Part shown: one piece after another, positions 1 through 17,399 of the stretch
How the letters are laid out: each line of letters starts with the position of its first letter
Position numbering within the stretch: the first letter of the stretch is position 1
Sequence record: NC_036595.1
Length of the DNA stretch: 18,222 bases
Direction: 5' to 3' (one strand)
The notes under the pieces: generated by a model
What the model was told of the DNA's origin: nothing
What the model saw: only the letters and a program-made list of their open reading frames with translations
Database searches by the model: none
Translations under genes and position numbers: made by a program

Positions 1-930
1 GTGAATAAGGCCGTGCTAGCTGTTCTAGCCCCCCTGCTGGCCCTGCTCCTAGCACTAGCCCCGGTAGCCTCGGCGGCTGGGCCGAGCGGTGTGGCGTACC
101 TGCCGCCCAGCGTCGCAATAGAGGGTGCAATCCAGCACAAGGCGCTAGAGGGCTACTCGATAAGCATACCCGCTAGTGACGGGACTACCGCCCAGGTTGT
201 GACCGTCGACCTCAGCCAGTACCTGCCTAGCGGGTTCGACGTTGACGGCGTTAGGCTGATAGTCGAGTCCACGGCGAGCGATAAGATAGTTGTCAAGGCG
301 CTGGATGCTAACAGTAACGTGCTCGCCCAGGCAGACGTGGTACCGCTGAGCTCCGGCTACGAGGTAACACTGCCCGCTGGCACTACACAGTTGCAGTTCG
401 AGAGCCTCTCCACCACAGTCTGGGAAGGCACTATAACGGTGATTGTGGAGTCTGCGATAGACATCGACCTAGTGTTCCAGAGCACGCAGATAACGTTGAC
501 TAACGGCTACGCCGAGGTGCCAGCCCAGGTAAAGGTGTACAACTCGCCCGCCGGGGAGCTGTTCCTGACCGACGATAGGCTAGACTTCGAGGTAAAGTTC
601 AAGGACACGAGCGACAACGACACAAGGGTAGAGATACAGGCGCACAACGACCCAGCCAACCCGGCAATCTACGACACCATAGTGGCTATATCCACCAGCG
701 CCGAGCCGGGCACATACACGATAAAAGTGACCATGTGGCTCTACAACAACGCGCTTAACGCCGAGTACGAGATAGACAGCTTCGACTTCACAGTCACCCT
801 CGAGGGAGATGGAAGCGGTACAGCGACTGTGAGTGAGCAGGCTGAGGAGTTAAGTCTAGACTGGGGCATGATAGGGCTGGGCGCCGTGGCTGCGGTAGTT
901 ATAGTGTTCCTGCTTGCTAGGGCGAGGTGA
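1..930 (+). CDS. Secreted/surface protein with signal peptide and C-terminal membrane anchor; candidate major virion envelope/spike protein
   Basis: N-terminal MNK + hydrophobic stretch + ASA-A cleavage-like site, beta-rich acidic body, C-terminal TM (WGMIGLGAVAAVVIVFLLARAR). First gene of the operon, and its stop overlaps the next start (GTGA). Confidence 0.75.
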   Translation: MNKAVLAVLAPLLALLLALAPVASAAGPSGVAYLPPSVAIEGAIQHKALEGYSISIPASDGTTAQVVTVDLSQYLPSGFDVDGVRLIVESTASDKIVVKALDANSNVLAQADVVPLSSGYEVTLPAGTTQLQFESLSTTVWEGTITVIVESAIDIDLVFQSTQITLTNGYAEVPAQVKVYNSPAGELFLTDDRLDFEVKFKDTSDNDTRVEIQAHNDPANPAIYDTIVAISTSAEPGTYTIKVTMWLYNNALNAEYEIDSFDFTVTLEGDGSGTATVSEQAEELSLDWGMIGLGAVAAVVIVFLLARAR

Positions 931-1121
931 TGGCCATGCTCCCCGTCTTAATCCTGCTCGGTATAGCTGTGCTGGCAGTAGCGCTCGGGTTCATAGACAT
1001 ACAGGCAACATTCGGCGACATTGACTGGAAGATGGTTGGCCTAGGCGCCGCCGCTGGCTTCGCCGCCCTGCTACTCATGAAACCCGGATTGGTCAAAAAG
1101 GCTGTGAACCGCATAAGATAA
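927..1121 (+). CDS. Small protein with two hydrophobic helices; candidate matrix or spindle-type capsid protein
   Basis: 64 aa, two TM segments and a basic C-tail (KKAVNRIR). Coupled to the upstream gene and followed by a T-tract. The structural role is inference. Confidence 0.65.
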   Translation: MMAMLPVLILLGIAVLAVALGFIDIQATFGDIDWKMVGLGAAAGFAALLLMKPGLVKKAVNRIR

Positions 1122-1140
1122 CCCCCTCTTTTTTCTCCCT
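1122..1140 (+). terminator. Oligo-T archaeal terminator after the first two genes
   Basis: CCCCCTCTTTTTTCTCCCT directly after the 1121 stop. Confidence 0.6.
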
Positions 1141-1208
1141 CGCGGGCCTCTCCCGCCTACACCCAGGGCGCCTAGGGCTGGGCCTGGGGGGCATGGGGGG
1201 CGGCCCCT

Positions 1209-1928
1209 ATGCCTCGACGCTTACATGTGTTGTTACTAGTTGCTATACTGGCTAGTGTAGTGTTACCCAGCGTAGCCGTAGCCTCGGCGGAAGACCCCCT
1301 ACCGCTGGAGTGGGGCGACACCGGCAAGGAGCTACCACCAGGATATAGAGTTACTGCGTTGACGCACGGCATCGCCGTAGCCATCGGCGGGCTATCTGGG
1401 TTCGCGGACGCCGTCGCGTGCGTGGGCGACTACTGCTTCGGCCTGGTGGGAGACGACGGGATTATCCCAGTACATGTGAATCTGTTTATCGCTGGCGAGA
1501 CGAGGGAGATAGACACGCTCTGGCAGGGAATGGCTGAGTATGATGCGGATTGGGCCTTCACCCTGCACTGCCCCGGGGAGAGCATAGGTGGCCTAGAGCC
1601 AGGCCCCGAAGAGGCCGTCCTCGAGGTTGAGAGTAGCCAGTACGGCATTAAGAGGTACTACCTAGTCGACCTGAGCCAGGGCGTCTCGCCGGACCTGAAG
1701 TACTTCTACGAGTCCACGCCCGGCGTGACGAGCTGGGTCGAGTTCACAGACCCTGAGAAGGTGAAGGACTGTGGGGGCGACTATCAGGGCGAGCCGCCTA
1801 GCGGCGGCGAAGGTAACAGGCCCCAGGGCGGCGGGCTGCTAGACCTGAATATGACCGTTGATTTAACGTGGCTGGCTCTAGGCCTAGTTGCGGTTGGATT
1901 TCTACTGATACTTCTAAAGAGGTGGTAG
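1209..1928 (+). CDS. Surface protein with signal peptide and C-terminal TM anchor
   Basis: MPRR + hydrophobic signal, Cys pairs, Gly/Pro linker (PPSGGEGNRPQGGG), then TM and LKRW tail. Confidence 0.75.
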   Translation: MPRRLHVLLLVAILASVVLPSVAVASAEDPLPLEWGDTGKELPPGYRVTALTHGIAVAIGGLSGFADAVACVGDYCFGLVGDDGIIPVHVNLFIAGETREIDTLWQGMAEYDADWAFTLHCPGESIGGLEPGPEEAVLEVESSQYGIKRYYLVDLSQGVSPDLKYFYESTPGVTSWVEFTDPEKVKDCGGDYQGEPPSGGEGNRPQGGGLLDLNMTVDLTWLALGLVAVGFLLILLKRW

Positions 1929-1929
1929 C

Positions 1930-2718
1930 ATGCTGAGGCCAGGCGTTGTGGCACTCCTGTTTATAGCGGCTATTGCGATAACACTCGGTATACAACCCCT
2001 GCTGGAGAGGGGTGTGCTTGAGGAAGCCTATTCGCAGGTCTTCGTCATAGTTTGCGAGGGCACGCCGGAATACAGGGAGATGTCGGCGAGCAGTTATGGG
2101 ACTGGGTGGTGGGTCAACGATAGTGGCTACGCCGTGACGGCCTACCACGTGGTGGATACTTGCGACACTATAACAGGTGTTCGGGGTGCCTGGAGCTCAC
2201 AGTTGCAGCTCATCGCCTACAACCCGGAGCTAGACGTGGCCCTACTCAAAGCCGTAAACCCACCTGACTGGGCTGAGGGGTTGCCTCTAGGCTACTCGGC
2301 CAGTATAGGGGATAAGGTGTATATAGTAGGGTATCCGCTGCAGGTGGTAGCTGAGCTTGACGGCGACCTGGCTAGGGCGAGCACGGCGCCTAGGGTGGCC
2401 GAGGCGAGCATAGCCTGGATAAGCCCAGACAGGGCTGTTATGGAGCTTGAAGGTGAGACTGACAAAGGAAACTCTGGCGGCCCAGTAGTCAGCCTAGAGT
2501 CTGGCGGCGTCGTTGGAATCATAGTCTACGCTAGAGAGGGCGCCGTCAGCACCTCGATATATGCGCTGCGTATGGACGCCCTGGCGCCGTTCTTGGACTC
2601 ATACAATGTCGAGTATGAGGTGGCGGGCCGCCCCCCGCTCCTCTTGCTGGGCCTGGGGCTCCTAGGGGCCCTGGGCCTGGCTCTAGTACTTTCGCGGGGT
2701 GTTAGGCTTGGGGCGTAA
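1930..2718 (+). CDS. Trypsin-like (S1/HtrA-type catalytic domain, no PDZ) serine protease with N- and C-terminal TM segments
   Basis: Catalytic triad motifs in order: GTGWWV..VTAYHVV (His), ELDVALLK (Asp), KGNSGGPVV (Ser), followed by GGVVGII. Confidence 0.92.
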   Translation: MLRPGVVALLFIAAIAITLGIQPLLERGVLEEAYSQVFVIVCEGTPEYREMSASSYGTGWWVNDSGYAVTAYHVVDTCDTITGVRGAWSSQLQLIAYNPELDVALLKAVNPPDWAEGLPLGYSASIGDKVYIVGYPLQVVAELDGDLARASTAPRVAEASIAWISPDRAVMELEGETDKGNSGGPVVSLESGGVVGIIVYAREGAVSTSIYALRMDALAPFLDSYNVEYEVAGRPPLLLLGLGLLGALGLALVLSRGVRLGA

Positions 2719-2920
2719 GCCTAAGTCTGACCTGGGGGTTGCATGTCTTGAGGTTGAGGCCCGTAACAGGGCCGAGCTGGCCAGGCTAATGGCAGAATCC
2801 AGGCGGCTAGCGCAGAAACTGGCTGAAATCGAGGAGATACTCCACCAGCAGGCCCTAGACCTAGCCAGGCTGACCGTTAGGCTGGTAGAGCTGGAGTCGA
2901 GGGTGAGGGCCGATGGCTGA
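2699..2920 (+). CDS. Small coiled-coil protein (start uncertain; may begin at the internal ATG near 2789)
   Basis: Heptad-like Leu pattern (LAQKLAEIEEILHQQALDLARLTVRLVELESRV). Fills the gap between flanking genes, and its stop overlaps the 2913 start. Confidence 0.55.
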   Translation: MLGLGRKPKSDLGVACLEVEARNRAELARLMAESRRLAQKLAEIEEILHQQALDLARLTVRLVELESRVRADG

Positions 2921-3377
2921 AGTCGAGATACTGGGATACGTGTTCACACAGGAGCAGCTAGAGGCGTATGCCACGCTGGTGGCCATACTGGGTGGTGCCG
3001 CGGCGACCGGGTTGTTGCTGGGCGTTATGCTAGACCTGCTGGTGCCCCGCAGGCGTAAAGAGGGTGGCGGGGACGGGGAGAGGCCGGGCGTGGAGAAGCG
3101 TGAGAAGAGTGTTGAAGAGCCGAGAATACCTGGTGTAGAGACTGCAGTTGCAGTGCACGTTGCCAGGATGGTGAAGAGCATGCTAGAGTCTGGAGAGGTA
3201 AAGATTAAACTGGTGAGGGATGATTGTGAGGGGGAGATTGTCTTCGACCTGAACACAAACGAGTTCAGATGCATAGACGAAGAGGGCAGGCTGCGGGGCC
3301 TGGGGGAGCCAGAGGCTGAGGACAGCCTAGAGGAGCTGGTGCGCGGCGGGGGTGGCAGGCGTGGCAGGCGCGGCTGA
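2913..3377 (+). CDS. Hypothetical single-pass membrane protein
   Basis: TM segment ATLVAILGGAAATGLLLGVMLDLLV followed by a charged cytoplasmic domain; operon-coupled. Confidence 0.7.
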   Translation: MAEVEILGYVFTQEQLEAYATLVAILGGAAATGLLLGVMLDLLVPRRRKEGGGDGERPGVEKREKSVEEPRIPGVETAVAVHVARMVKSMLESGEVKIKLVRDDCEGEIVFDLNTNEFRCIDEEGRLRGLGEPEAEDSLEELVRGGGGRRGRRG

Positions 3378-4314
3378 GGCGCTGGCGGTCGTGCCGGTGG
3401 GGATACTGGCGGGGCTGGCGACCTTCGCGGTGTATATAAACCGGTATGTGGGCGACTGGGGCTGGCTGACTAGCTGGGGCGACAGGCTGGCGTTCCTGCT
3501 CTGGCCCAGGCCGCCTAGGAACGTTGTGAAACTAATCCACCCCGATGGCAGGATAGACCTGATTTACAATGTGGACGCTAGGGAGAGCAAGAACTCGGTG
3601 GTGTTTGAGACGCCCTTCGGGGTGGTGAAGGTACAGCCCCCCAGGCACCTAGTGTCAGGGTTGAACCTGTACGTGCCAGGCAGGCCCTCGCCGCTCCACT
3701 TCGTTGTTGGGGCGATGGCGGGGCTGCTGGTCGTCTACCTAGTGCTGTATTACGGCTGGCTCTTGATACTGGGCATGGGCGGGTTGAGCCTCGCGGCCTT
3801 CGCAGTGCTGGGTTACGCCTACATGTGGTATCAGGCGGCGATGACGCCTAACACTATATACTACCCGCTCATCGTGACTGCCGTGGCTTCGGGCTTCATC
3901 CAGGCCGTCCCCGCCCCGGGAGAGGCGATATCGCCTAAAGAGTTTCTCAGGATGTACAACCAGGGCGTCAAGATAGTTGTAGACAAAGAGGCGAAAGAGG
4001 CGCTCGAGGAAGTGGCCAACATGTTGGGCGTTAAGGACATAAGCACCGCCGCCGAGATACTGTCGAGCGCGAGCATGTACAGCACGCTGCGGAAGACGAT
4101 AACCTCGATGGCCGCGAGGGCCGCCTCTATAAGCGAGGTGCAGAAGTCGATAAGCGTCTACACGTTCGAGGAGCTTAGGCGGGTCACACTAGGCAGGATT
4201 CTAGCTTGGGGGGTGTTCTTTGTTATAGGTGTTCTGGTGGGGTGGGCCCTCTTCGGCGGCGGGGACGTGGTCATAATGCCAGCCTCTCAGGAGCTGGGGG
4301 TGGCTGGGCCGTGA
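3352..4314 (+). CDS. Polytopic membrane protein
   Basis: Several hydrophobic segments (N-terminal, two or three central, one C-terminal); overlaps both neighbours. Start may be 3352 or 3361. Confidence 0.75.
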   Translation: MAGVAGAAEALAVVPVGILAGLATFAVYINRYVGDWGWLTSWGDRLAFLLWPRPPRNVVKLIHPDGRIDLIYNVDARESKNSVVFETPFGVVKVQPPRHLVSGLNLYVPGRPSPLHFVVGAMAGLLVVYLVLYYGWLLILGMGGLSLAAFAVLGYAYMWYQAAMTPNTIYYPLIVTAVASGFIQAVPAPGEAISPKEFLRMYNQGVKIVVDKEAKEALEEVANMLGVKDISTAAEILSSASMYSTLRKTITSMAARAASISEVQKSISVYTFEELRRVTLGRILAWGVFFVIGVLVGWALFGGGDVVIMPASQELGVAGP

Positions 4315-5393
4315 GGTGGGTTATATTTGTGTTTATAATGCTGGGTCTACTAGCCCAGCCCGTTGCTGGGCTGTCGATCAATTATGTGTTGTACAGTGCA
4401 GACTTCCAAGTGCCAGAGTCGGCTGTCGAGGCGCAGCAAGACGGGAGCGCCGTGCTGGAGCTTCAGTTCTATTTCCCCTGGGACTTTGACTCCGGGTTGT
4501 GGAAGAATAGGGTTAGTGTGGGTGGCTGGGATGGCATCGACGTTGAGAGGCGGTGGATAATAGGTAGCAACGATGTGTTGCTGGCTGTAAGGGCGTGGGG
4601 TTATGTGGATGGTAGTCACGGGGATCTGCTGACGTGTAACGGTGATGTTAGGAGTGCGGACTACACTACAGACCCGGATATAGGGGTGGAGTGCTATGTG
4701 AGCTACAGGCACCCTCTTAGCCAGGCTGGAGACGCTATATACCATATTATGATAGTTGTTACGCCATACGATGCTAGGTATTACCAGGTCGAGTACTACT
4801 TTGAAGGCCAGCTTATAGCCAAGTTCCTGAGGAGCCAGTACACGTACAACAATACAGAAGCCTGGCTGCTCAACACGTTTGACGATATAACAATGCGCAA
4901 TGCACTAGCCACTATAGGCCCGCCTATACCACTCTCGGGCGAGGCCAGGCTGGAGTGGAGTACAGCTATACCAGTCCCTGCTAAGACTGGCTACGAATAT
5001 AGGGTTACCGGCGGCGAGGTAGTAGAGGTTAGAGAGGGGCCGGGCGGGTACCAGCTAATGTATATACAGCCTAGTTTAACGGAGACTGCGAGCCCCTGGC
5101 GGGAATCATGCTATCCATACACGGTGACGCACGAGGGCTACGTGGGCGACACATGGACCACGCTAACCTGGACTAGGATGGAGTGTGAGACGATATACAC
5201 GACAATCTACACTGGGGAGATAATCCTCGAGGCTTACGAGCCCGGCAGTAACAGCCTCGAGGCTGTGCTGAGGCTGAACTTGCTACCCCAGGACGGCGCC
5301 GAGGGCGGTGGCAACAGGACACTAGCTCTAGTGGGGCTGGGGCTTATCGTTGCGGCGGTTGTAATGTTACTGCTTAGGGGTGGCAGGCGGTGA
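4311..5393 (+). CDS. Surface protein with signal peptide and C-terminal TM; possible ConA/LamG-like lectin domain
   Basis: Start reassigned from 4206 to GTG 4311 (GTGA overlap with the upstream stop), which gives a clean signal peptide MRWVIFVFIMLGLLAQPVAG. C-terminus EGGGNRT + TM + RGGRR. Confidence 0.75.
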   Translation: MRWVIFVFIMLGLLAQPVAGLSINYVLYSADFQVPESAVEAQQDGSAVLELQFYFPWDFDSGLWKNRVSVGGWDGIDVERRWIIGSNDVLLAVRAWGYVDGSHGDLLTCNGDVRSADYTTDPDIGVECYVSYRHPLSQAGDAIYHIMIVVTPYDARYYQVEYYFEGQLIAKFLRSQYTYNNTEAWLLNTFDDITMRNALATIGPPIPLSGEARLEWSTAIPVPAKTGYEYRVTGGEVVEVREGPGGYQLMYIQPSLTETASPWRESCYPYTVTHEGYVGDTWTTLTWTRMECETIYTTIYTGEIILEAYEPGSNSLEAVLRLNLLPQDGAEGGGNRTLALVGLGLIVAAVVMLLLRGGRR

Positions 5394-5584
5394 GGCATGG
5401 TGGCATACTCATTATCTTACTTATAGCTGCTGTGGTTGGGGCGAACCTGTATGTACAATTGAGCTGGGACTATGCAGATGCCCCGCCAGACGTAAAGCAA
5501 GCGCTACTGATAGGTGGCCTGGGGATGCTGGGGCTCGCCCTGCTGGGCTTCCCCCTATTGTTGAGGCGGGGCGGCAGGGTCTAG
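5390..5584 (+). CDS. Small two-TM protein
   Basis: 64 aa, two hydrophobic helices, RRGGRV tail, GTGA-coupled to the upstream gene. Confidence 0.7.
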   Translation: MRHGGILIILLIAAVVGANLYVQLSWDYADAPPDVKQALLIGGLGMLGLALLGFPLLLRRGGRV

Positions 5585-5592
5585 GCGGGGGC

Positions 5593-5661
5593 GGTACCAT
5601 TGTGGTACCAGTATGGTACTGGCCAGGGGGGACCTGGTACCAGGTGGTACCTGGCGGTACT
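5593..5661. repeat. Six GGTAC(C) copies with about 10.5-bp periodicity and nested palindromes
   Basis: GGTAC at 5593, 5604, 5615, 5636, 5646, 5656; perfect 14-bp palindrome ACCTGGTACCAGGT at 5632-5645. Confidence 0.85.
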
Positions 5662-5932
5662 GCCACTGGCGGTGTTGCTGGACGCCACAACAACAACGAT
5701 AGGCCTGTGGCTGGGCCTGGCTGAGAATGGGCCCCTGGCTTCCATGCTTCTCCCGGTCCTGGGCCCCCTGTACTGGCTGCTGGAGCTCACAGTAATACTC
5801 ATATTATACAATGTAATAAGGAGATACGCCAGACTGCCTAGCGACTGGGCCATGTTGGTCTCGGTTATTGGGCCCTGGACCGCCGGCTGGGCCAACCTCG
5901 CAATGGTAGCTAGGGTGGTGCTGGGTGGTTGA
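5600..5932 (+). CDS. Membrane protein resembling the DUF5658-type small archaeal membrane family
   Basis: Motif LLDATTTTIGLWLGLAENGPL (D-x-x-TT...G...E-N-x-P-L) with three hydrophobic helices; TTG start after GGCGGGGG. The family call is from memory of the motif. Confidence 0.6.
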   Translation: MWYQYGTGQGGPGTRWYLAVLPLAVLLDATTTTIGLWLGLAENGPLASMLLPVLGPLYWLLELTVILILYNVIRRYARLPSDWAMLVSVIGPWTAGWANLAMVARVVLGG

Positions 5933-6284
5933 CTATCCGGGCTGGCTCTACCCCGCCGCCTGGCTGGCTGCAATACTCGCCTCAGCCCTAATCCTGGCAC
6001 TGGTGTACTGGAAGACTGAGAGTATTAGAACAGGGCTGATAGTCTCACTGCTCTGGATGAAGGCCGCCGCCCTGGTGCTCTGGCTTGTGGGGCTGGATAG
6101 GCCAGTCGTCAAACTCCTGTTTATAAGGAGTGGGGATATAGCCTGGGGCCTCACGCTGACGGCGAACATGCTTGTGGTTGTGGCCCTCGCGGTGACAAAC
6201 CTTACCATCTACGCCTGGCCCGAGCTCTCCCGCGAGCTCCTGGGCAGGCGCGAGGGGCTCCCGGGCGTCCTAGGGCGGGGCTAG
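5925..6284 (+). CDS. Polytopic membrane protein, last gene of the + strand structural operon
   Basis: Three hydrophobic segments; overlaps the previous gene; followed by a T-tract and an AT-rich intergenic region. Confidence 0.7.
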   Translation: MVDYPGWLYPAAWLAAILASALILALVYWKTESIRTGLIVSLLWMKAAALVLWLVGLDRPVVKLLFIRSGDIAWGLTLTANMLVVVALAVTNLTIYAWPELSRELLGRREGLPGVLGRG

Positions 6285-6287
6285 ACC

Positions 6288-6301
6288 CACCCTTTTTATC
6301 A
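6288..6301 (+). terminator. Oligo-T terminator
   Basis: CACCCTTTTTATCA; near-identical CACCTTTTTA motifs recur near 6700 and 7635. Confidence 0.55.
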
Positions 6302-6355
6302 TTAGTATAAATAAATGGGGGCGGGGTATATACCCCTATATGGAAATACATACTT

Positions 6356-6415
6356 AGATTTATTACCTCTCGTTGCTATATGTTTAACATGGCCCGTAAA
6401 ACGGTGTGTGTAAAA
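6356..6415 (+). promoter_or_regulatory. 60-bp repeated promoter, copy 1 (TATA TTTATTA at 6359, palindrome ATGTT-T-AACAT)
   Basis: 52/60 identical to copy 2 and 51/60 to copy 3 by manual alignment; directly precedes an ORF. Confidence 0.85.
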
Positions 6416-6426
6416 GGGTGGTAGAG

Positions 6427-6669: not shown

Positions 6670-6675
6670 TCTCAA

Positions 6676-6735: not shown

Positions 6736-6793
6736 TATCTATACCCCCAGTTCCCCCTTTCAACCCCATACATGTATATACCTGCTTATGCTA

Positions 6794-10780: not shown

Positions 10781-11352
10781 CCGTGTTGGGCCTCGACGCG
10801 CGGGACCTCAAACAGAGGTACAAAAACAAATGGTCTAGGTCGAATGCTAGGGAGCAGTTCGTGCTCGCCGCCTTGCAGGCGTATCTGCCGCCTGGCTTCG
10901 AGGCCCGCTTGACGGGGCTCGGCGCTGGCTCAAGCGAGTACATCGAACACAACTACAAGAGCCTAGAGGAAGCCTTCGACATAACAGTGTATTATATGGA
11001 TAGGCCTGTGGCGTTCCTCGACGTCACGGGCGTTGTCAGCGTGTTGAACGCTAGGCGGGCGGCCTGCAACGGCAGGTGTGTGGGGAGCTGGAAGCTCAGG
11101 AAGGCGGAGAAGCACCGCGTGCTGGGCAGGGTGTGGTTCGCGTGGGTCAACGACCAGACGGCGTCGATATATTTCCTGCCTGCCGCCTGGCTGGCGCAGC
11201 ACGCCGAGGGCCCCCACGTCTCCAAATGCAGGCTGTACAGCGACGAGAGAATAGTCTACTGCGTCAGGCCGGGCTACTGGAAGAAGCTCTACAACTTCCT
11301 CAGGTGGCTCGCAGCATACGGCCCCGTAGCCGACTACCTAACACCCTTCTAG
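10777..11352 (+). CDS. Putative PD-(D/E)XK-fold nuclease
   Basis: Helix with E (NAREQFV), then FDITVYY..PVAFLDVTG (D...D-x-T variant) and a downstream Lys (SWKL). Confidence 0.5.
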   Translation: MTVLGLDARDLKQRYKNKWSRSNAREQFVLAALQAYLPPGFEARLTGLGAGSSEYIEHNYKSLEEAFDITVYYMDRPVAFLDVTGVVSVLNARRAACNGRCVGSWKLRKAEKHRVLGRVWFAWVNDQTASIYFLPAAWLAQHAEGPHVSKCRLYSDERIVYCVRPGYWKKLYNFLRWLAAYGPVADYLTPF

Positions 11353-11353
11353 G

Positions 11354-11575
11354 GTGGTTATTATGGCCGCGATGGACATCGAGGTTATCTTAACCCCGCC
11401 TAGAGGGCGGGGGATGCTGATATTCTCGTTCAAGGCGCCCCCACAGCTTATCCAGGAGTTCGACAAGGCAGCCCGCGCCGCGGGCGTGACCAGGAGCACC
11501 GCGATACGCCTGCTGATACGCCACGCCCTGGAGAACCCCGAGCTCCTGAAGAAGCTGGCCGAGAGGGGTGAGTAG
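11354..11575 (+). CDS. CopG-family ribbon-helix-helix transcriptional regulator (start may be a downstream ATG)
   Basis: LIFSFKAPPQLIQEFDKAARAAGVTRSTAIRLLIRHAL is a canonical RHH (G-V-T-R-S-x-x-I-R). Confidence 0.85.
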   Translation: MVIMAAMDIEVILTPPRGRGMLIFSFKAPPQLIQEFDKAARAAGVTRSTAIRLLIRHALENPELLKKLAERGE

Positions 11576-11577
11576 CG

Positions 11578-11949
11578 GTGGCCAGGGGGGTTGAGTATCT
11601 CCGTTATATAACGCCTATGACTCTCGACGAAGAAAGCGCCTACCAGTTGCTGTTTGCTAGGGCCATGAACCATTTAAACGGCAGGCGGTTCTTGGGGGTC
11701 AAACGGTTAGTCAGGGCCAAGCGCAGATGCGAGGGCGTGCAGTCCGTAATGGAGCCATACAGGTATTTTAGCCGTTGCGACAGGCAGGCCGAGATAGCTC
11801 TCCTGTTCCAGTACAATTACAAGTACTATGCGGTGTACCTCTGCAGGGAGTGCTATGTGAAGACGGTCGAGGCCGTGAAGAAATACCTACAGGATAGAGT
11901 GTCGAGCATAGCCGAGTCGCTCCTGGAAATGGCGGGCGACGAGGGGTGA
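11578..11949 (+). CDS. Hypothetical protein, putative Zn-binding
   Basis: Four Cys including LCRECY plus upstream RC residues; operon context. Confidence 0.6.
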   Translation: MARGVEYLRYITPMTLDEESAYQLLFARAMNHLNGRRFLGVKRLVRAKRRCEGVQSVMEPYRYFSRCDRQAEIALLFQYNYKYYAVYLCRECYVKTVEAVKKYLQDRVSSIAESLLEMAGDEG

Positions 11950-11958
11950 TTATGGCCC

Positions 11959-12285
11959 GTGCCGGGGGTGGTAATTACGCCGCTAACGGCTAGGGAGTTC
12001 CTGCTAGGGCTACTCTGGCTGGGCCCTAGAACGCCCGAGGAAATCCGGCTCGCAGCCGAGGAGTACAGTAAACATAATGTCGTGCTGTACACGCCCCAGC
12101 GGATAAACAAGGCTATCGAGCACTTCCAGGCCGCAGGCCTGGCCAGGCTTGAGAACGGCAGGCTGGTGCTGGAGAGGGAGAGGCTGCACCCCAGCCTCAG
12201 GCAGGCGGCCAAGGTGCTGGCGCAGGCCATAGACGGGGGTGATGGAGATGGCCGAGGTCGTGATAGCGTACAGCCCCCACACTAG
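11959..12285 (+). CDS. Winged helix-turn-helix DNA-binding protein (PadR/ArsR-like)
   Basis: LLGLLWLGPRTPEEI...TPQRINKAIEHFQAAGLARLENGRLVL matches helix-turn-recognition helix, GL and beta wing. Confidence 0.75.
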   Translation: MPGVVITPLTAREFLLGLLWLGPRTPEEIRLAAEEYSKHNVVLYTPQRINKAIEHFQAAGLARLENGRLVLERERLHPSLRQAAKVLAQAIDGGDGDGRGRDSVQPPH

Positions 12286-12496
12286 GCGTAGGGCCGAGGC
12301 CCTCGCCTGGTTCTTCCAGAGGCTAGGCCTCAGGGTGGTGCTCAGAGAGGATGGCGGTGAGGGGGTCAGCGTCAAGTACGGTGGTGTCTGGTGGCTGGAC
12401 CCAGACGAGGCGATACGCCACATAGTCTCGCGGGGCTGGGGTAATTTCAATCCACGTTTAAAAACATCGGTTAATGGGGGTGGACGTCCTTTATGA
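12239..12496 (+). CDS. Small hypothetical protein, possible Cys-less glutaredoxin-like fold (likely start ATG 12248)
   Basis: beta-alpha-beta pattern (VVIAYSP..AEALAWFFQRLGLRVVLRE..VSVKYGG..DPDEAI); fold call is weak. Confidence 0.55.
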   Translation: MMEMAEVVIAYSPHTRRRAEALAWFFQRLGLRVVLREDGGEGVSVKYGGVWWLDPDEAIRHIVSRGWGNFNPRLKTSVNGGGRPL

Positions 12497-13512
12497 CCCG
12501 GGTTTCCCCAGCACGGGCTGGGGCAGGCGCCGTGGTGTTCTACAGGGTCAAGCGGGTCAAGGGCAGGTACTACCTTGTCAAGGAGTGGTGGGACCCGGGG
12601 TTGAAGAAGAAGATCACCAAGTCGATAGGCCCCTGTGAATGGCTAGAGGGCCTCAGCGAAGAATACAGGGAGAGGACGCGGGGTACTAGGGGCCCCGCCC
12701 CTAGAGTGGTGCCGCGGCCGGGATTTGAACCCGGGTCACGGGCTCGAAAGGCCCGCAGTAGGCGGGGCGCCCAGCCTACCGTTTCCCCAGGCAACGGGTC
12801 CACCGTGGAGCCCTACTACAGGCGGCTATGGGAAACCTGGTGCCTGGAGAGGGGCACAAGCCCCGAGACCTGTGCCAGGTACTCGGGCTACCTGCAAAAG
12901 CCCCTGGACCCAGGCAACCGCTGGAGCGCCAAGGCCTGGAAGCTCTACTACAAGTGGCGGTGCGAGCTGGGGGACCAGACGGCCTGCGAGGACTACAAGA
13001 GGGTGAAGGTGCCGCAGGCCGGGGCGGACAAGCGGGTGCCAAGCCTAGAGGCAATACTAGACAGTATAGAGAGGGCGGGCCCCTACCGCATAGTCTACAT
13101 TATCCTGCTAGAGTCTGGGCTCAGGCTGGTAGAGGCGGTGAAGCTTATCCGCGAGTACGATAGGCTGGAGTGCACCAGGCTGGACGGCTACACCCGCTGC
13201 CTGCTGGGCTACACGCGGGGGAAGAAGAGGGCGCTCTGGGGCTACCATATCACGCCTGTAGAGCCTATGGAAGACCTGACGGACAGAAGGGTGACAAGCT
13301 ACGCAGAGAAGTACAGGCTAACCCCGCCAAAGTACATTCGAAAGTTCGTGGCCACTAAGATGGCCGAGCTAGGCGTTCCCTTCGAGGTTATAGACTTCAT
13401 ACAGGGCAGGACGCCTAGAAGCGTGTTGCTCCAGCACTACGCCCAGCTACTGGGCGTGGCGGACAGGGAATACGCCAAGTATGCTAGGTGGCTCAGGGGG
13501 TGGATGGGGTGA
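12493..13512 (+). CDS. int: SSV-type tyrosine recombinase (integrase), intact form
   Basis: N-terminal YRVKRVKGRYYLVK domain; antisense-tRNA peptide VPRPGFEPGSRARKAR; catalytic motifs ESGLRLVEA (R), KKR, KYIRKF (K-x-x-R), FIQGR and QHYA (Y). Confidence 0.95.
   Translation: MTRVSPARAGAGAVVFYRVKRVKGRYYLVKEWWDPGLKKKITKSIGPCEWLEGLSEEYRERTRGTRGPAPRVVPRPGFEPGSRARKARSRRGAQPTVSPGNGSTVEPYYRRLWETWCLERGTSPETCARYSGYLQKPLDPGNRWSAKAWKLYYKWRCELGDQTACEDYKRVKVPQAGADKRVPSLEAILDSIERAGPYRIVYIILLESGLRLVEAVKLIREYDRLECTRLDGYTRCLLGYTRGKKRALWGYHITPVEPMEDLTDRRVTSYAEKYRLTPPKYIRKFVATKMAELGVPFEVIDFIQGRTPRSVLLQHYAQLLGVADREYAKYARWLRGWMG
12707..12757 (-). other. attP core: 3' half of tRNA-Glu(TTC) including CCA, embedded in the integrase gene (not a complete tRNA)
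   Basis: Reverse complement TGCGGGCCTTTCGAGCCCGTGACCCGGGTTCAAATCCCGGCCGCGGCACCA gives anticodon stem CGGGC/GCCCG, loop CT-TTC-GA, T-arm CCGGG-TTCAAAT-CCCGG, 3' acceptor strand and CCA. No D-arm or 5' acceptor strand is present. Confidence 0.93.
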
Positions 13513-13703
13513 GGCTTGAGGTCCTGGTGCTGCAAAATCCTGACCATAAAACACTGCGTAGGCTGCTCAGGCGGCATAACGGCAGGATACTGGCTGTAGC
13601 CCTTGTCGTCGAGGTCGAGAGCAAAAAACAGGTTTCAGCTCTTGCGAGGCACTATAGGCTTAGGCCTCTCCCCGTCCCCGCCACCCTCTTTATCGAGCAC
13701 TAG
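13509..13703 (+). CDS. Small basic hypothetical protein (64 aa)
   Basis: Start reassigned to GTG 13509 (GTGA overlap with the integrase stop, GGGGG upstream); converges on the ATPase gene. Confidence 0.55.
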   Translation: MRLEVLVLQNPDHKTLRRLLRRHNGRILAVALVVEVESKKQVSALARHYRLRPLPVPATLFIEH

Positions 13704-13709
13704 CGCCTG

Positions 13710-14648
13710 CTAGCTGTTCCACCTTATTTTTATTAGCGGCTTATGTGTTCCATTCTCCCTGAGGTAGAAGTCTATCCCGTTCCCTCTCCTCACAGTCTTT
13801 ATACCTTTAACGTATGTCTCATACTGTATTGTAGGCTTCCCAGTTCCATCGTTCCATTGTTCCTCTCCAGCCCCGCCAGCATGCTCCACCCTAGCCTGCT
13901 GGGGTAGAGCCTCGAGGCTCCGCCTAGCCTCTGGCTCTGCCCTCACTAGCGATCGGTGGCGTTTAAGCACAGCAACAGCCCTGTGCACGGTCTGCCACGT
14001 GACCTCAGGGTCATTACTAGTCCACAACTTCATAGATAAGTCGTGTAGTGCCATAAGACCTGCACCCCCGACTAGGGGGCCTAGCAACCTGAAGTCGGCT
14101 GGCTCGTCTGGGTAGCTCTTGAAGAACTTGAGCACCGCCATACGCCTAAACGTGATATCCACTAGGTGGTAGACCTGCGAGGCGTGGACTGCGAGTAGGA
14201 ATCCGTTGAATCCTAGGGCCTTGAGCCTATGCCTTATCATAATGTAAGCCTGCGACTCGCTAACGTTCTCCCTGGACATTGCCCGCCTTCCATGCCCGCC
14301 CTTGGTGGCGGGGGCGTCGTCGTTGAATATGTAGAGGTACATACACCTATCTAGGTCTAGGCTTGTAGCGGCCTCTAGCAACTGCTGTATCCCGGCCTCT
14401 TTACCGTAAACATAGCATATCGAGTAGTCGTCCACGCCCTGGCCTAGGAGCGCCTGAACGGCCTCTCCCAGCTTAGCCTCGATAAAGGTGGTCTTGCCAC
14501 TACCCATCTCCCCCACTATTAGGGCGCTCCTCATATGCAGAGGAGCCCTCTCCACAAACCCAGGCGGCGGGGCCATGTAAGCTAGGATACGGCCCCTAAC
14601 CTTAGTCTCGGGGGTCTCCTGTGTCACTACCTCTTTCATTGCTACCAC
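13710..14648 (-). CDS. A32-like (FtsK/HerA superfamily) P-loop ATPase; probable genome-packaging/assembly ATPase
   Basis: Walker A GEMGSGKTT, Walker B LYIFNDD, then IRH....LLAVHASQVYHLVDITFRR, matching the RH...hhhsQ...hR signature of A32-type ATPases. Confidence 0.85.
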   Translation of the reverse strand: MVAMKEVVTQETPETKVRGRILAYMAPPPGFVERAPLHMRSALIVGEMGSGKTTFIEAKLGEAVQALLGQGVDDYSICYVYGKEAGIQQLLEAATSLDLDRCMYLYIFNDDAPATKGGHGRRAMSRENVSESQAYIMIRHRLKALGFNGFLLAVHASQVYHLVDITFRRMAVLKFFKSYPDEPADFRLLGPLVGGAGLMALHDLSMKLWTSNDPEVTWQTVHRAVAVLKRHRSLVRAEPEARRSLEALPQQARVEHAGGAGEEQWNDGTGKPTIQYETYVKGIKTVRRGNGIDFYLRENGTHKPLIKIRWNS

Positions 14649-14965
14649 TCCTCTTCCAGCCTCTGCCTCTTCACCAGCAAGCCCGCCTGCTGCAGCATCC
14701 TAGCCACACGCCTGTACACGGCCATAACCTCGTGGTAGCTCCTAGCCCTGGCCAGCTCCTGATACAGCCCATCCACCCCGCCCTTAACCACTGGGTCGGC
14801 CAGGTCGAGTAGCACCAGCACGGCGCCCCGCAGCTCAGCCAGCTTATACTCCTGCCTGGCCCTAGGGGTACGCCAGTACTCGGTGGCCAGCCTGGCTATC
14901 CTCTCCACCTGCTGGGTCAACACCCACGTGTAATCCACCCTGTCTTTTGTAACCTCGTATGTCAT
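14642..14965 (-). CDS. Helical hypothetical protein adjacent to the ATPase
   Basis: Preferred ATG 14965 immediately after the upstream stop (14967); coupled to the ATPase. Confidence 0.7.
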   Translation of the reverse strand: MTYEVTKDRVDYTWVLTQQVERIARLATEYWRTPRARQEYKLAELRGAVLVLLDLADPVVKGGVDGLYQELARARSYHEVMAVYRRVARMLQQAGLLVKRQRLEEEW

Positions 14966-14966
14966 G

Positions 14967-15302
14967 CTATTCCACCTCTCCACCCTCTTCTATAGCGCCT
15001 GGCGGCTGGCTCATCTCCTTGAGGAAGTCCTCGTCAACAGGGATCCCCTCACGGCACACCACAGCCATTAGGAGCAGCATCTTCTCGCTGGGCGGTAGGC
15101 CCCGGGGGCTGTAGGCCCACCTCAGGCCCTGCCAGGCAAAATACCCCTGGAGCCTCTCCTCAACCTCACCACAATCCCTGGCGCCGACCAGCAGGCCCGC
15201 CAGCTCCGCCGTGACCTCGTCACCGAGTATGCGCCCGAGCCTCTCGACTAGCCTGTCTATACTCCTCTTCCCCAGCCTATAGCTCTGTATATCGAAACTC
15301 AC
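14967..15302 (-). CDS. Hypothetical protein (111 aa)
   Basis: GTG start with GGGGGGTGG upstream; operon context. Confidence 0.7.
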   Translation of the reverse strand: MSFDIQSYRLGKRSIDRLVERLGRILGDEVTAELAGLLVGARDCGEVEERLQGYFAWQGLRWAYSPRGLPPSEKMLLLMAVVCREGIPVDEDFLKEMSQPPGAIEEGGEVE

Positions 15303-15376
15303 ACTAGGCCACCCCCCGCATAATGAGGGTGAAATGGGGAAAAACAGGTGTACTACTTACGGGCCCCCTTTCTTCC

Positions 15377-16153
15377 CTAGAATCCTATGATATCGTCTAG
15401 GTGCTCCAGCTCATACCTGGCTACATCGTCTAGCTCCCTAGCGACCATCTTCTCCCACTCGCTGTCCTCATACATCCTACTGATGTACTTCCACCTCTCC
15501 AAGTCTTCCTTGGCTATCTCCTCTAGCGTCTTACCCAGGGCTTCCCTAACTAGCCCCTTGGCATAGTGGTAGCCTAGAGACCAGTCCACTAGCTCTTTCC
15601 AGTCGTATTGATACGGGTCTATACCCTTCTCCTTAGCTCTGTCGTGTATTGCCTTCGCTAGTGCTAGCGCCATTATATATGTCCAGACCCTATCCTTTCC
15701 CCTCTTGTAACGCTTGGGTATCCATCTCCAGATGTCCTCTGCTAGGCTCCTAACAGCGGGGCTCCTGGCCCAGGTCTGCCTAGCCCTCTTCAGGGCCTTA
15801 GCCAGGGCCTTGGCTGTTATGGCTTTTACAGCCTTAGACTCGACCTTCTTACCGGCTCCCAGCTTCTTGGTTACCTTCTTCGCCTGGCTCTTGCTGGCCT
15901 TACTAACCTCTCGCTTTAGCCTTCTAACAACCTTTATCACGTCGTGGGTGTGTCTCCAGGGGCCCCTGCCTACCTTCTTCCCCCTGCGCCTGTCCAGGTG
16001 TGGGGTGTGCTTCGATATGTGGCTCCTAGAGCGGGCGTAGTAATGGCCCGGGCCAGTCCACGCCTTCTCGCACGCCCTCTTACTGTACCCCCTCTCCTCG
16101 CACCACTTGAGCAGTTGTTTCTTCGTCTTGAAGAAGTAGAGCTTGGTTACCAC
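15377..16153 (-). CDS. Highly basic K/R-rich protein; candidate nucleoprotein
   Basis: Very K/R/A-rich first ~140 aa (histone H1-like KKVTKKLGAGKKVESKAVKA), acidic helical C-terminus; directly downstream of the VP2-like gene. Confidence 0.7.
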   Translation of the reverse strand: MVTKLYFFKTKKQLLKWCEERGYSKRACEKAWTGPGHYYARSRSHISKHTPHLDRRRGKKVGRGPWRHTHDVIKVVRRLKREVSKASKSQAKKVTKKLGAGKKVESKAVKAITAKALAKALKRARQTWARSPAVRSLAEDIWRWIPKRYKRGKDRVWTYIMALALAKAIHDRAKEKGIDPYQYDWKELVDWSLGYHYAKGLVREALGKTLEEIAKEDLERWKYISRMYEDSEWEKMVARELDDVARYELEHLDDIIGF

Positions 16154-16159
16154 ACCGCC

Positions 16160-16402
16160 TCACCCCCCGAGCACGTATAGCTTGAACTGTATCTTACGCT
16201 TGATCCTGCGCCAGTGGCTCCCCGCCAGCCGCTTGAGGAACTCTTCGTCCTTGTAGAGCTTCCGCAGCACCCTATCGTTTATCTCGCCAGTTTTCGTAAA
16301 CGGGTCGCCGTACCTACGCTTTATAGCCTGCCTATGCTTGAGCAGCCACCTGGTTAGGCTGCCCCACCTAATCCTGCTCCAGTCTATCCTACGCCTAGCC
16401 AT
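16160..16402 (-). CDS. SSV1 VP2-like virion DNA-binding protein
   Basis: 80 aa, very basic. GSLTRWL...RYGDPFTKTGEINDRVLRK resembles the VP2 core (G..hR.L...YG..AFTKDG.I) as recalled from fusellovirus VP2. Confidence 0.7.
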   Translation of the reverse strand: MARRRIDWSRIRWGSLTRWLLKHRQAIKRRYGDPFTKTGEINDRVLRKLYKDEEFLKRLAGSHWRRIKRKIQFKLYVLGG

Positions 16403-16406
16403 AGTA

Positions 16407-17399
16407 TCACCGCCTCATAAGCATGAACAATATAGCCACTGCAACCAGGCCCAGTGGTACCAGCAGGCTGCGCAGGTTCAGCCCGCCGCCCTCTCCCGTG
16501 AGCGTTATCGTCTGGACCTCGGTAACCACCCTAGTCCCGCCTGGGCCTGTGGCTGTGTATGTTGTTGTTATCACGCTTGTGTATGTGTCCGTGTAGGTGT
16601 AGGTTGTCGTGGACGTCTCTGTCTCTGTTATCGTGAACGTTTCTGTCTGGACAGGTACAACAACAACTGCACTATCCGCCGTGGCCTGGCTAGTGAACTG
16701 GTAGTCGTTCACTAGGCCAGCTAGACCTAGGCTATAGCCCACCGAGACCGAGCCAGCACTAGGGCCCTGCCCGATGCTTGCTGCAGTACTAGCTACGCTA
16801 CAATTATATATTGTCTTTGTGGTTGTAGACGTGTAGTTTATCGTCACATCTGTGTGATTAACATACTCGAAATAGCCAGACCTGCTGCCGTCCCACGTGT
16901 GTGACCCCACACTCTCGTCCAGTAACACCGTCCCGTCTGGGAGCTTTATCACCACGTGGGTGGGATCCGAGTAACCACTACCACTATGGTTTATGCCTGT
17001 TAGGGTTAGTGTTATACTTGTTAGCGTATCGCTAGTGATGCTGAATGAGCCAGTCACCGTGTAACCACTCTGTGAAAAACTGGCTGCATCCACCCATTGC
17101 CCGAGCTCCTGGACATACGTCTCAAACTCTGTAACGCTACCCCCGAAACTGTTGGGAGTGAATTCTATAGTGAACTCGAAGACATAAAATGTTGCCGCGT
17201 TCCCAGTGCAGATTGAGCTTAGGTCGTTCGACGTTCCGACTTCAAGGTCAACAGCATACCCAAAAACATAGTCGAGAGAGGTCGGGGCTGTCGTGGGGGC
17301 TGAGACTGTAGTCTGGCCATACACCAGACCCGCAAACACCGAAACCACTAGCAATATAGCGGTAAAAATAAGGCTGTGTAAATTGTGAAATTTAGGCAT
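16407..17399 (-). CDS. Surface glycoprotein/adhesin-like protein with signal peptide, Thr-rich stalk and C-terminal TM
   Basis: Hydrophobic N-terminus; S/T-rich beta domain with four N-x-S/T sequons (NHS, NHT, NYT, NCS); TETFTITETETSTTT stalk; EGGG + TM + MRR. Confidence 0.8.
   Translation of the reverse strand: MPKFHNLHSLIFTAILLVVSVFAGLVYGQTTVSAPTTAPTSLDYVFGYAVDLEVGTSNDLSSICTGNAATFYVFEFTIEFTPNSFGGSVTEFETYVQELGQWVDAASFSQSGYTVTGSFSITSDTLTSITLTLTGINHSGSGYSDPTHVVIKLPDGTVLLDESVGSHTWDGSRSGYFEYVNHTDVTINYTSTTTKTIYNCSVASTAASIGQGPSAGSVSVGYSLGLAGLVNDYQFTSQATADSAVVVVPVQTETFTITETETSTTTYTYTDTYTSVITTTYTATGPGGTRVVTEVQTITLTGEGGGLNLRSLLVPLGLVAVAILFMLMRR

What the first reader, a model, noticed from the sequence alone, without database searches (positions are those of the whole stretch)
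790..17399. Shared Gly-rich + GLG-TM + basic-tail C-terminal anchor on many surface proteins, co-encoded with a membrane protease
Seen: the proteins at 1, 1209, 1930, 4311 and 16407 end with a Gly-rich linker (EGDGSG, QGGG, EGGG, EGGG in four of them), a TM helix containing GLG or LGLVAV, and an R/K tail. Established: this tripartite layout is the architecture of C-terminal sorting signals (GlyGly-CTERM/rhombosortase, PGF-CTERM/archaeosortase). Inference: it is a virus-specific virion-sorting or processing signal, possibly cleaved by the viral protease or a host sortase.
Basis: partly seen in the sequence, partly recalled or inferred. Interest (0 to 1): 0.6.

Follow-up and report, generated by a model that had tools for sequence, protein, structure and literature searches.

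The report
Shared membrane anchor on virus proteins
Seven exported proteins of an archaeal hot-spring virus, including its main coat protein and a protease, end in a near-identical membrane-spanning tail that the host's own surface proteins lack; it is most likely a retained anchor that gathers these proteins in the viral envelope, not a signal that is cut off.

Summary
The window is the complete genome of Aeropyrum globular virus 1 (AGV1). Seven proteins, not five, end in a linker, a transmembrane (TM) helix and an R/K tail. Each has Leu-Gly at TM position 6-7.

The seven tails resemble each other far more than random sets of host A. pernix anchors do (p about 5e-5), and more than their composition explains.

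I found six related (pro)viruses and about 25 coat-protein clusters. They keep the signature [DN]-W-K-x-Phi-G-Phi-G on unrelated ectodomains, and the membrane protease is a core gene.

The sortase reading fails its tests:
- No PGF-CTERM or GlyGly-CTERM model matches.
- The Aeropyrum genomes hold no archaeosortase or rhombosortase, only a generic rhomboid.
- The motif also sits on 61-64 aa hairpin proteins, which have no cargo to release.
- In natural gene fusions the same helix is internal.

Best reading (0.55): these are retained type-I anchors, as in pleolipovirus spikes, and the shared glycine signature co-assembles envelope proteins. Cleavage by the viral protease or the host rhomboid is not excluded (about 0.17). 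The published 28.5 kDa coat band does not discriminate.

The scan has not noted this motif on other DNA.

The parts
1..930 (+). ORF1, major virion protein (309 aa): signal peptide, two beta-sandwich domains, disordered linker (aa 269-287), TM helix (aa 288-307), tail RAR. The anchor module is encoded at nt 805-927.
   Evidence: Annotation. The paper reports an Edman N-terminus internal to the ORF and a 28.5 kDa band. AF2 model pLDDT 89. Coordinates.
936..1121 (+). ORF2, a 61-aa hairpin membrane protein. Its second helix carries DWKMVGLG and a basic tail (nt 1017-1118). It is fused to the coat protein in distant relatives.
   Evidence: It scores 23.0 bits with the anchor model built without AGV1 sequences.
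1227..1928 (+). ORF3 (233 aa; an alternative start lies at 1209): signal peptide, lectin-like beta-sandwich ectodomain, G/P-rich linker, anchor with ALGLVAV, tail KRW (nt 1821-1925).
   Evidence: (the anchor Gly219 is invariant in 7 homologues).
1930..2718 (+). ORF4, trypsin-like serine protease held by an N-terminal TM and a C-terminal anchor (nt 2620-2715). Catalytic motifs at H73, D102, S182. No PDZ domain.
   Evidence: Pfam Trypsin_2 72.6 bits. NCBIfam MarP/HtrA-like hits below cut-off. Topology and motifs.
4329..5393 (+). ORF8 (354 aa; an alternative start lies at 4311): signal peptide, ectodomain, EGGG, anchor with VGLGL, tail RGGRR (nt 5298-5390).
   Evidence: 10.9 bits with the non-AGV1 anchor model. 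Weak C-terminal similarity to ORF33.
5390..5584 (+). ORF9, a 64-aa hairpin membrane protein. Its second helix has GGLGMLGL and tail RRGGRV (nt 5489-5581).
16407..17399 (-). ORF33 (330 aa): signal peptide, T-rich ectodomain, EGGG, anchor with PLGLVAV, tail RR (nt 16410-16496).
   Evidence: 6.4 bits with the non-AGV1 anchor model.
3361..4314 (+). ORF7, a polytopic membrane protein of unknown family. It is a core gene of the group and lies in the same module.
5600..6284 (+). ORF10 and ORF11, small polytopic membrane proteins of unknown family. Both are core genes of the group.

Best explanation
The shared tails are stop-transfer, type-I membrane anchors that stay on the mature proteins. Shown: each protein has an N-terminal signal or anchor sequence, an exported beta-rich domain, a flexible Gly/Ser/acid-rich linker, one out-to-in helix and a short Arg/Lys(/Gly) tail. 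The helix carries a virus-family-specific signature, [DN]-W-K-x-Phi-G-Phi-G, in its outer-leaflet third. A Gly/Ala-rich stretch follows, then a Leu-rich inner half. Inferred: the proteins are inserted by the host Sec system and trimmed by signal peptidase, and they remain in the host membrane that becomes the virion envelope. The common small-residue face lets the helices of the coat protein, its hairpin partners (ORF2, ORF9), the minor surface proteins (ORF3, ORF8, ORF33) and the membrane-tethered protease pack against one another. On this reading the module works as a virion co-assembly or incorporation tag rather than a cleavage signal. The basic, often RGG-like, tails face the cytoplasm and later the virion interior. 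The protease is a co-localised envelope enzyme whose substrate is unknown.
For: The layout and motif are real and exceed chance. The motif is virus-specific. A model built only from relatives scores AGV1 ORF2 23.0, ORF1 15.3, ORF3 11.0, ORF8 10.9, ORF33 6.4 and the protease 4.5 bits. The best of 7178 host ORFs score 11.5 and 8.5 bits, and no host surface-protein anchor exceeds 5.3 bits. The 8.5-bit hit lies inside a provirus region of A. pernix K1. The signature is conserved over a diverged family: 40 of 53 proteins from six related elements and about 25 coat-protein clusters carry it, on unrelated ectodomains, and the anchor Gly is invariant in 7 ORF3 homologues. The motif sits on 61-64 aa hairpin proteins whose exoplasmic loop is only about 13 aa, so there is nothing to release. 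In natural fusions the same helix is internal and is followed by a basic loop and a further TM. These are coat+ORF2 with three TMs, and a 702-aa chain of three type-I modules ending in the protease. The AF2 model of the coat protein gives a beta ectodomain, a disordered linker at 269-287 and a helix at 288-307. Precedent: the HRPV-6 VP5 spike has a glycine-rich 19-aa linker and a C-terminal TM whose peptides are recovered from virions (PMC6381117). No sortase-type enzyme is available in the host.
Against: No direct data show intact C-termini in virions. The published coat band of 28.5 kDa is nearer the mass of an anchor-less form (27.6-28.6 kDa) than of the signal-peptide-cleaved full form (30.15 kDa), although the difference is within SDS-PAGE error for a membrane protein. 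G-x-G places the two glycines on different helix faces, so it is not a classical GxxxG packing motif. Helix association was not shown: the complex prediction for the coat tail with ORF2 gave no verdict. A lipid envelope has not been demonstrated for AGV1. Paralogous C-terminal domains with this tripartite layout are the pattern by which sorting signals were discovered (PMC3237569).
Confidence: 0.55

Rival explanations
1. Processing signal. The shared module is recognised and cut in or next to the membrane. The cutter would be the co-encoded membrane-tethered serine protease, the host rhomboid, or one of the uncharacterised core polytopic proteins (ORF7, ORF10, ORF11). Cutting would release or remodel the ectodomains during maturation.
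For: The tripartite paralogous C-terminal domain is the hallmark used to discover sorting systems, in which protease and target are often encoded by adjacent genes. The protease is a core gene next to the motif-bearing genes in all relatives where the region is available, and its close clade occurs only in coat-bearing genomes. Its domain is held at the membrane surface by both ends. Phi-x-x-G followed by x-Phi fits the loose rhomboid P4/P1/P2' preference (my recollection of the literature), and a rhomboid is present in 5 of 6 Aeropyrum genomes. The 28.5 kDa band matches a cut near G294.
Against: Hairpin proteins with no cargo carry the motif. Cutting would detach the major virion protein from the particle, and no lipid-attachment enzyme is known here. 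The motif helix is internal in the fusions. Rhomboid is ubiquitous: it is found in all 14 control genomes, so its presence is not specific. No family assignment links ORF7, ORF10 or ORF11 to any peptidase.
Confidence: 0.17
2. Plain anchors, with the motif carrying no function of its own. The similarity would reflect descent from one anchor cassette spread by duplication, fusion, fission or gene conversion, plus general biophysical needs such as a flexible hinge or insertion into the C25 diether membrane.
For: The coat anchor and the second helix of ORF2 look duplicated, and fusion and fission of neighbouring genes is frequent in the group. Anchor-coding DNA of ORF1, ORF2, ORF8 and ORF33 is more alike than codon-shuffled controls (z 3.5-5.5). 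ORF8 and ORF33 share about 63 C-terminal residues. Several orthologues lack the motif: 13 of 53 proteins, including the L128 and L220 coat proteins.
Against: The glycines persist at about 25-30% overall identity while the neighbouring TM residues drift. That pattern indicates selection on the motif itself.
Confidence: 0.2
3. A genuine archaeosortase (PGF-CTERM-like) or rhombosortase (GlyGly-CTERM) substrate set, processed by a dedicated host sorting enzyme with lipid attachment.
For: There is a tripartite layout with a Gly-containing motif, a TM helix and a basic cluster. The ArtA literature reports processing of one non-C-terminal tripartite signal (reference list of PMC7157517).
Against: No NCBIfam CTERM model matches at E<=10 and TIGR03501 finds nothing. 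PF09721 has no match in any of the six Aeropyrum genomes, and only 3 matches over cut-off (4 at E<=0.01) among 61 genomes of the family. TIGR04178 is below cut-off in K1, a second complete genome and three provirus-bearing genomes, while the archaeal controls score over cut-off. TIGR03902 reaches at most 17 bits against a cut-off of 84. Host surface proteins do not carry the motif.
Confidence: 0.03

Closest known systems
Pleolipovirus spike proteins (HRPV-1 VP4, HRPV-2/-6 VP5)
   Same: They are type-I envelope proteins of an archaeal membrane virus. They have a cleaved N-terminal signal peptide, a glycine-rich flexible linker of about 19 aa, a C-terminal TM helix and a very short tail. The anchor is retained in virions (PMC6381117).
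   Different: No sequence or fold similarity was detected: Foldseek against PDB returned only generic beta-sandwich matches. The host is a hyperthermophilic crenarchaeon. In AGV1 the same anchor signature is shared by seven proteins, including a protease and two hairpin proteins, which is not described for pleolipoviruses.
GlyGly-CTERM / rhombosortase (e.g. Vibrio cholerae VesB)
   Same: Both have a Gly-rich motif, a TM helix and a basic tail. Several proteins in one genome are homologous only in that tail. One bearer is itself a trypsin-like serine protease (PMC3237569, PMC6219818).
   Different: The TIGR03501 model does not match. No rhombosortase subfamily member is present in the host. The signature here lies inside the helix and follows D-W-K. 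It also occurs on internal helices and on hairpin proteins.
PGF-CTERM / archaeosortase A
   Same: It is an archaeal tripartite C-terminal signal on surface glycoproteins (PMC7157517).
   Different: There is no PGF motif, no model match and no archaeosortase in Aeropyrum.
HtrA/DegS/MarP-type membrane-associated trypsin-fold proteases
   Same: The Trypsin_2 domain has His/Asp/Ser motifs, faces the exoplasmic side and is tethered to the membrane.
   Different: There is no PDZ domain. Scores are far below every equivalog cut-off (60 bits against 250 for MarP). The protein is anchored at both ends, encoded by a virus, and fused to an ORF3-like domain in one relative.

Membership tests
PGF-CTERM / archaeosortase A system | PGF signature motif immediately before the hydrophobic helix, matching the curated PGF-CTERM model | tested here: not met
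   No PGF is present. NCBIfam scans of the whole proteins and of the last 45 aa return no CTERM family at E<=10.
PGF-CTERM / archaeosortase A system | Cognate archaeosortase/exosortase encoded by the organism | tested here: not met
   PF09721 has no match in any of the six Aeropyrum genomes. TIGR04178 has none over cut-off in G017, G028, G051, G016 or G008, while three control genomes score over cut-off. The virus encodes none.
PGF-CTERM / archaeosortase A system | C-terminal cleavage with lipid attachment | not testable with these tools
   This needs mass spectrometry of virion proteins.
GlyGly-CTERM / rhombosortase | Match to TIGR03501 (22-residue Gly-rich motif, TM helix, basic cluster) | tested here: not met
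   No match in the AGV1 genome at E<=10.
GlyGly-CTERM / rhombosortase | Rhombosortase subfamily protease (TIGR03902) co-occurring with the targets | tested here: not met
   The best hit is 17.3 bits against a cut-off of 84 in five Aeropyrum genomes. Only a generic rhomboid (PF01694) is present.
GlyGly-CTERM / rhombosortase | Several proteins per genome that are homologous only in the C-terminal tripartite region | tested here: met
   Seven AGV1 proteins are alike only in the tail. The same holds in the relatives.
Type-I envelope-protein anchor (architecture class, as in pleolipovirus spikes) | Cleaved N-terminal signal peptide | tested here: met
   Hydrophobic N-termini are present. The paper's Edman sequence of the ORF1 product starts inside the ORF.
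Type-I envelope-protein anchor (architecture class, as in pleolipovirus spikes) | Flexible linker, then a single C-terminal TM helix with a positive-inside tail | tested here: met
   AF2 models: ORF1 linker 269-287 has pLDDT about 50 and a helix at 288-307. ORF3 has low confidence at 202-211 and a helix at 205-232. Tails are R/K-rich.
Type-I envelope-protein anchor (architecture class, as in pleolipovirus spikes) | Anchor retained in the mature virion protein | not testable with these tools
   The only datum is the 28.5 kDa band, against 30.15 kDa calculated with the anchor and 27.6-28.6 kDa without it. This is inconclusive.
HtrA/MarP trypsin-fold serine proteases (for ORF4) | Trypsin_2 domain with a His/Asp/Ser triad | tested here: met
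   PF13365 scores 72.6 bits against a cut-off of 27.6. Motifs lie at H73, D102 and S182.
HtrA/MarP trypsin-fold serine proteases (for ORF4) | Equivalog-level score or a PDZ domain | tested here: not met
   MarP scores 60 bits against 250, and DegP/HtrA 42 bits against 416. There is no PDZ hit.

The most novel reading that the evidence does not exclude
The module is a virus-encoded C-terminal sorting or processing system. The conserved D-W-K-x-Phi-G-Phi-G helix would be the recognition element. The doubly anchored viral serine protease, one of the uncharacterised core polytopic proteins ORF7/ORF10/ORF11, or the host rhomboid would cut it to mature the virion proteins. This would be a sortase-like many-to-one system carried by a virus, in a phylum where no such system is known.
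Probability: 0.12. Interest if true: 0.8.

Novelty: new variant of a known kind. Interest (0 to 1): 0.4.

Why it matters
AGV1 was described as an orphan virus with one identified structural protein. This analysis shows that it belongs to a wider group of crenarchaeal (pro)viruses. The group has a conserved membrane module: coat protein, lectin-like protein, tethered protease and three polytopic proteins. Nearly every out-to-in helix of that module bears one signature that host proteins lack.

If the signature is an incorporation tag, it gives a simple rule for how an archaeal enveloped virus selects its envelope proteins, and a handle for targeting reporters to virions. If it is a cleavage signal, it would be a virus-borne sorting system. 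Either outcome can be tested by one virion mass-spectrometry experiment.

Tried and rejected
- The search for related loci with ORF31 in genome contigs found nothing. The coat alignment found nothing in viral contigs or metagenome contigs.
- The word search for ORF33 returned only itself.
- The genome search 'relatives' is not available for a virus record. I reached the host genus through an exact tRNA-Glu pattern instead.
- The complex prediction for the coat tail (aa 250-309) with ORF2 gave no verdict (score 0.01). It counts neither for nor against binding.
- Foldseek of the coat model against PDB gave only generic tandem beta-sandwich hits with TM about 0.2.
- Pairwise BLASTP of ORF1 against ORF2 is not significant once composition-adjusted (E 0.68). 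The relation rests on the family profile and on the fusions.
- Pfam gives no family for ORF7, ORF10, ORF11, ORF2, ORF9 or ORF34.
- The genome-wide look-up of earlier findings returned unrelated viruses.
- My first two regex and HMM scripts failed or were too strict and were rerun.
- I considered using the gel mass to decide on cleavage and rejected it, because the 5% difference is within error.


Full report
**Identity of the window.** The 18,222 bases are, at 100% identity, the complete circular genome of Aeropyrum globular virus 1 (AGV1; LC208019 / NC_036595; host Aeropyrum pernix). The only paper in the library (bioRxiv 10.1101/2021.04.21.440749) reports 60-nm spherical particles. It finds one major virion protein of about 28.5 kDa, whose Edman N-terminus lies inside ORF1_309, which implies a cleaved signal peptide. 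It also predicts TM helices in 13 ORFs. It does not mention a shared C-terminal motif.

**The observation.**
- ORF2 (936-1121, 61 aa) and ORF9 (5390-5584, 64 aa) are two-helix hairpins whose second helix has the same form. The set is therefore seven.
- Aligning the last 45 residues gives an invariant Leu-Gly. Measured from the last charged residue before the helix, the Leu sits at position 6 or 7 in all seven.

**Is it more than chance?** I fetched the whole A. pernix K1 chromosome (G017, 1,669,696 bp) and extracted ORFs that have an N-terminal hydrophobic signal, a C-terminal TM and a basic tail. This gave 88 ORFs, of which 32 are single-pass.
- The generic layout is therefore common in the host. 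Host linkers are Thr/Glu-rich and host helices are Ala-rich.
- LG at helix position 4-8 occurs in 7 of 88 host anchors against 7 of 7 in AGV1 (Fisher 3e-7, post hoc). Shuffling each AGV1 helix gives 7 of 7 in 5 of 100,000 trials.
- A motif-free test agrees. The mean pairwise local BLOSUM62 score of the seven tails is 36.8. Random sets of seven host anchors give 24.1 +/- 2.0 (5e-5 reach the observed value). AGV1 tails with shuffled cores give 25.9 +/- 1.1 (0 of 1000).

**Relatives.** The coat protein has two word-search homologues at 47-48% identity. One lies on a 31-kb metagenomic scaffold (L128) with a syntenic module.
- A profile search found 29 representatives, about 25 of them true family members.
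- Five of 325 genomes of the host's order hold a coat homologue. I fetched their surroundings (L219-L223).
- The coat protein, ORF3, the protease, ORF7, ORF10 and ORF11 are shared across these elements.
- Homologues of the protease at 42-51% identity occur only in coat-bearing genomes. Twelve further genomes hold 29-36% homologues that are also anchored by a C-terminal TM and basic tail.

**The motif in the family.** Orthologues of the coat protein, ORF2, ORF3 and the protease mostly keep a small-Phi-Gly triplet near the outer end of the helix, often preceded by D-W-K. So do proteins with unrelated ectodomains (L128 293-aa and 180-aa proteins; L223 352-aa and 181-aa proteins).
- 40 of 53 proteins carry the motif, giving 49 non-redundant instances.
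- The anchor glycine is one of only ten invariant columns among seven ORF3 homologues at 28-61% identity.
- An HMM built only from non-AGV1 instances scores AGV1 ORF2 23.0, ORF1 15.3, ORF3 11.0, ORF8 10.9, ORF33 6.4 and the protease 4.5 bits.
- Among 7178 six-frame host ORFs the best scores are 11.5 and 8.5 bits. No host surface-protein anchor exceeds 5.3 bits.
- The 8.5-bit hit is a 58-aa hairpin ORF inside a provirus region of K1 that shares an integrase, ORF18 and ORF31 with AGV1.
- The signature is therefore a property of these viruses, not of the host secretome.

**Gene fusions.** About a dozen distant coat proteins are coat+ORF2 fusions with three helices. The coat anchor is followed by a conserved cytoplasmic loop (GGKGRRG) and then the ORF2 hairpin. 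Both out-to-in helices carry the motif.
- In G181 a 702-aa ORF strings together three type-I modules. First come an ORF3-like domain, a motif helix and SGRK, followed by a signal-peptide-like helix.
- The second module has a second ectodomain, a GGG linker, a motif helix and RQR, again followed by a signal-peptide-like helix. The chain ends with the protease, a motif helix and RGGRR.
- These fusions fix the topology: ectodomains outside, basic segments inside.
- They also show the motif helix working as an ordinary internal stop-transfer segment.

**Structure.** The AF2 model of ORF1 (25-sequence alignment, pLDDT 89) gives two beta-sandwich domains (aa 29-268), a disordered linker (269-287) that starts at GDGSG, and a helix (288-307). 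ORF3 (pLDDT 83) is a single lectin/ConA-like sandwich followed by a linker and a helix. The Gly-rich segments are therefore flexible tethers. Orthologues conserve their character, not their sequence.

**Tests of the sorting-signal reading.**
- No Pfam or NCBIfam C-terminal sorting model matches whole proteins or tails at E<=10. TIGR03501 finds nothing.
- PF09721 is absent from all six Aeropyrum genomes, with only 3 matches over cut-off (4 at E<=0.01) among 61 genomes of the family.
- TIGR04178 has no hit over cut-off in K1, a second complete genome or three provirus-bearing genomes, while three control genomes do score over cut-off.
- Rhomboid is present, but it is also present in all 14 controls. 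The rhombosortase model reaches only 17 bits against 84.
- The core polytopic proteins ORF7, ORF10 and ORF11 match no peptidase family.
- Membership in the known sortase-type systems is therefore not met.
- One caveat applies. The reference list of PMC7157517 cites ArtA processing of a tripartite signal that is not C-terminal. The internal position in the fusions therefore argues against cleavage less strongly than the absence of enzymes does.

**What it most likely is.** The closest functional analogue is the pleolipovirus spike. It has a signal peptide, an ectodomain, a glycine-rich 19-aa linker and a C-terminal TM whose peptides are found in virions (PMC6381117).

I conclude, at 0.55, that the AGV1 tails are retained type-I anchors. 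I also conclude that the family-wide glycine/alanine-rich outer half of the helix serves lateral association. This would bring the coat protein, its hairpin partners, the minor surface proteins and the protease into the same membrane patch and so into the virion.

The anatomy, specificity and conservation are shown. Retention, association and the presence of an envelope are inferred.

**Rivals.**
- Processing by the viral protease, the host rhomboid or an unknown viral enzyme: 0.17.
- A motif inherited from one cassette with no function of its own: 0.20.
- A true archaeosortase or rhombosortase substrate set: 0.03.

The gel datum is ambiguous. The calculated masses are 30.15 kDa for aa 26-309 and 27.6-28.6 kDa for forms ending between L284 and G294, against 28.5 kDa observed.

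**Novelty.** The architecture class is known. What is new is a conserved, virus-specific helix signature shared by many non-homologous proteins, including a protease, across a previously unrecognised group of crenarchaeal (pro)viruses. I rate this a new variant of a known kind, with moderate interest.

Noticed in passing
window 12710-12785 (-), inside the integrase gene 12493-13512; L220:2300-3154 and L222:9164-9994: The feature annotated as tRNA-Glu is not called by ARAGORN. Only its 3' part, from the anticodon arm onward, looks tRNA-like, so it resembles an attP. In two related proviruses (genomes G016 and G008) an integrase fragment 76% identical to AGV1 residues 72-335 starts exactly at the same tRNA-Glu 3' sequence. 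AGV1-type elements therefore do integrate at tRNA-Glu, although the paper found no integration site.
   Followed up: partly
P0013-P0016, P0018, P0021, P0023-P0025, P0027, P0028, P0031; L221:3609-4631(-), L223:8982-10073(-): Distant coat proteins are natural fusions of the coat protein with the ORF2 hairpin, giving three TM helices joined by a conserved GGKGRRG cytoplasmic loop. This suggests that AGV1 ORF1 and ORF2, separated by only 5 nt, act as one membrane unit.
   Followed up: partly
L229:229-2337(+) (genome G181, contig 21): A 702-aa ORF chains three type-I modules: an ORF3-like domain, a second ectodomain and the protease. Each ends in a motif helix plus a basic segment, and each is followed by a signal-peptide-like helix with an AxA site. 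The arrangement resembles a polyprotein that signal peptidase could cut into separate envelope proteins.
   Followed up: partly
host A. pernix K1 chromosome 478,552-488,331 (loci L153-L154); small ORF at 481,703-481,879: This provirus region shares an integrase, ORF18 (62% identity) and ORF31 (73% identity) with AGV1. It encodes a 58-aa hairpin protein whose second helix has W-LGLG and a basic tail, like AGV1 ORF2 and ORF9.
   Followed up: partly
tails and loops: window 5376-5390, 5564-5581, 3340-3374; fused coat proteins: The cytoplasmic sides of the anchors repeatedly read RGGRR, RRGGR or GGKGRRG. ORF6 ends in RGGGGRRGRRG. These Arg-Gly motifs would face the virion interior and might contact the DNA. 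No nucleoprotein has been identified for this virus.
   Followed up: no
window 1227-1928 (ORF3): The predicted ectodomain is a lectin/ConA-like beta-sandwich. The best PDB matches are galectins and eqolisin peptidases, with TM 0.3-0.4 normalised by target. It is a core gene, always next to the protease and fused to it in one relative, which makes it a candidate receptor-binding or protease-partner protein.
   Followed up: partly
window 3361-4314, 5600-6284 (ORF7, ORF10, ORF11): These three polytopic membrane proteins have no family assignment and are conserved in all relatives. ORF7 keeps a C-terminal GGGD(V/I)V-like motif just after its last helix. ORF10 keeps a D-A-T-T-T...G-L...G-L-x-E motif.
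   Followed up: no
window 17421-18068 (-), ORF34: This conserved exported protein has an N-terminal hydrophobic segment but no C-terminal anchor. Its C-terminal strand ending in VVTVVYKI(T/V)(L/V)P is conserved in two relatives (L220, L223) and diverged in a third (L222). It is the one structural-module protein examined that lacks the shared tail.
   Followed up: no
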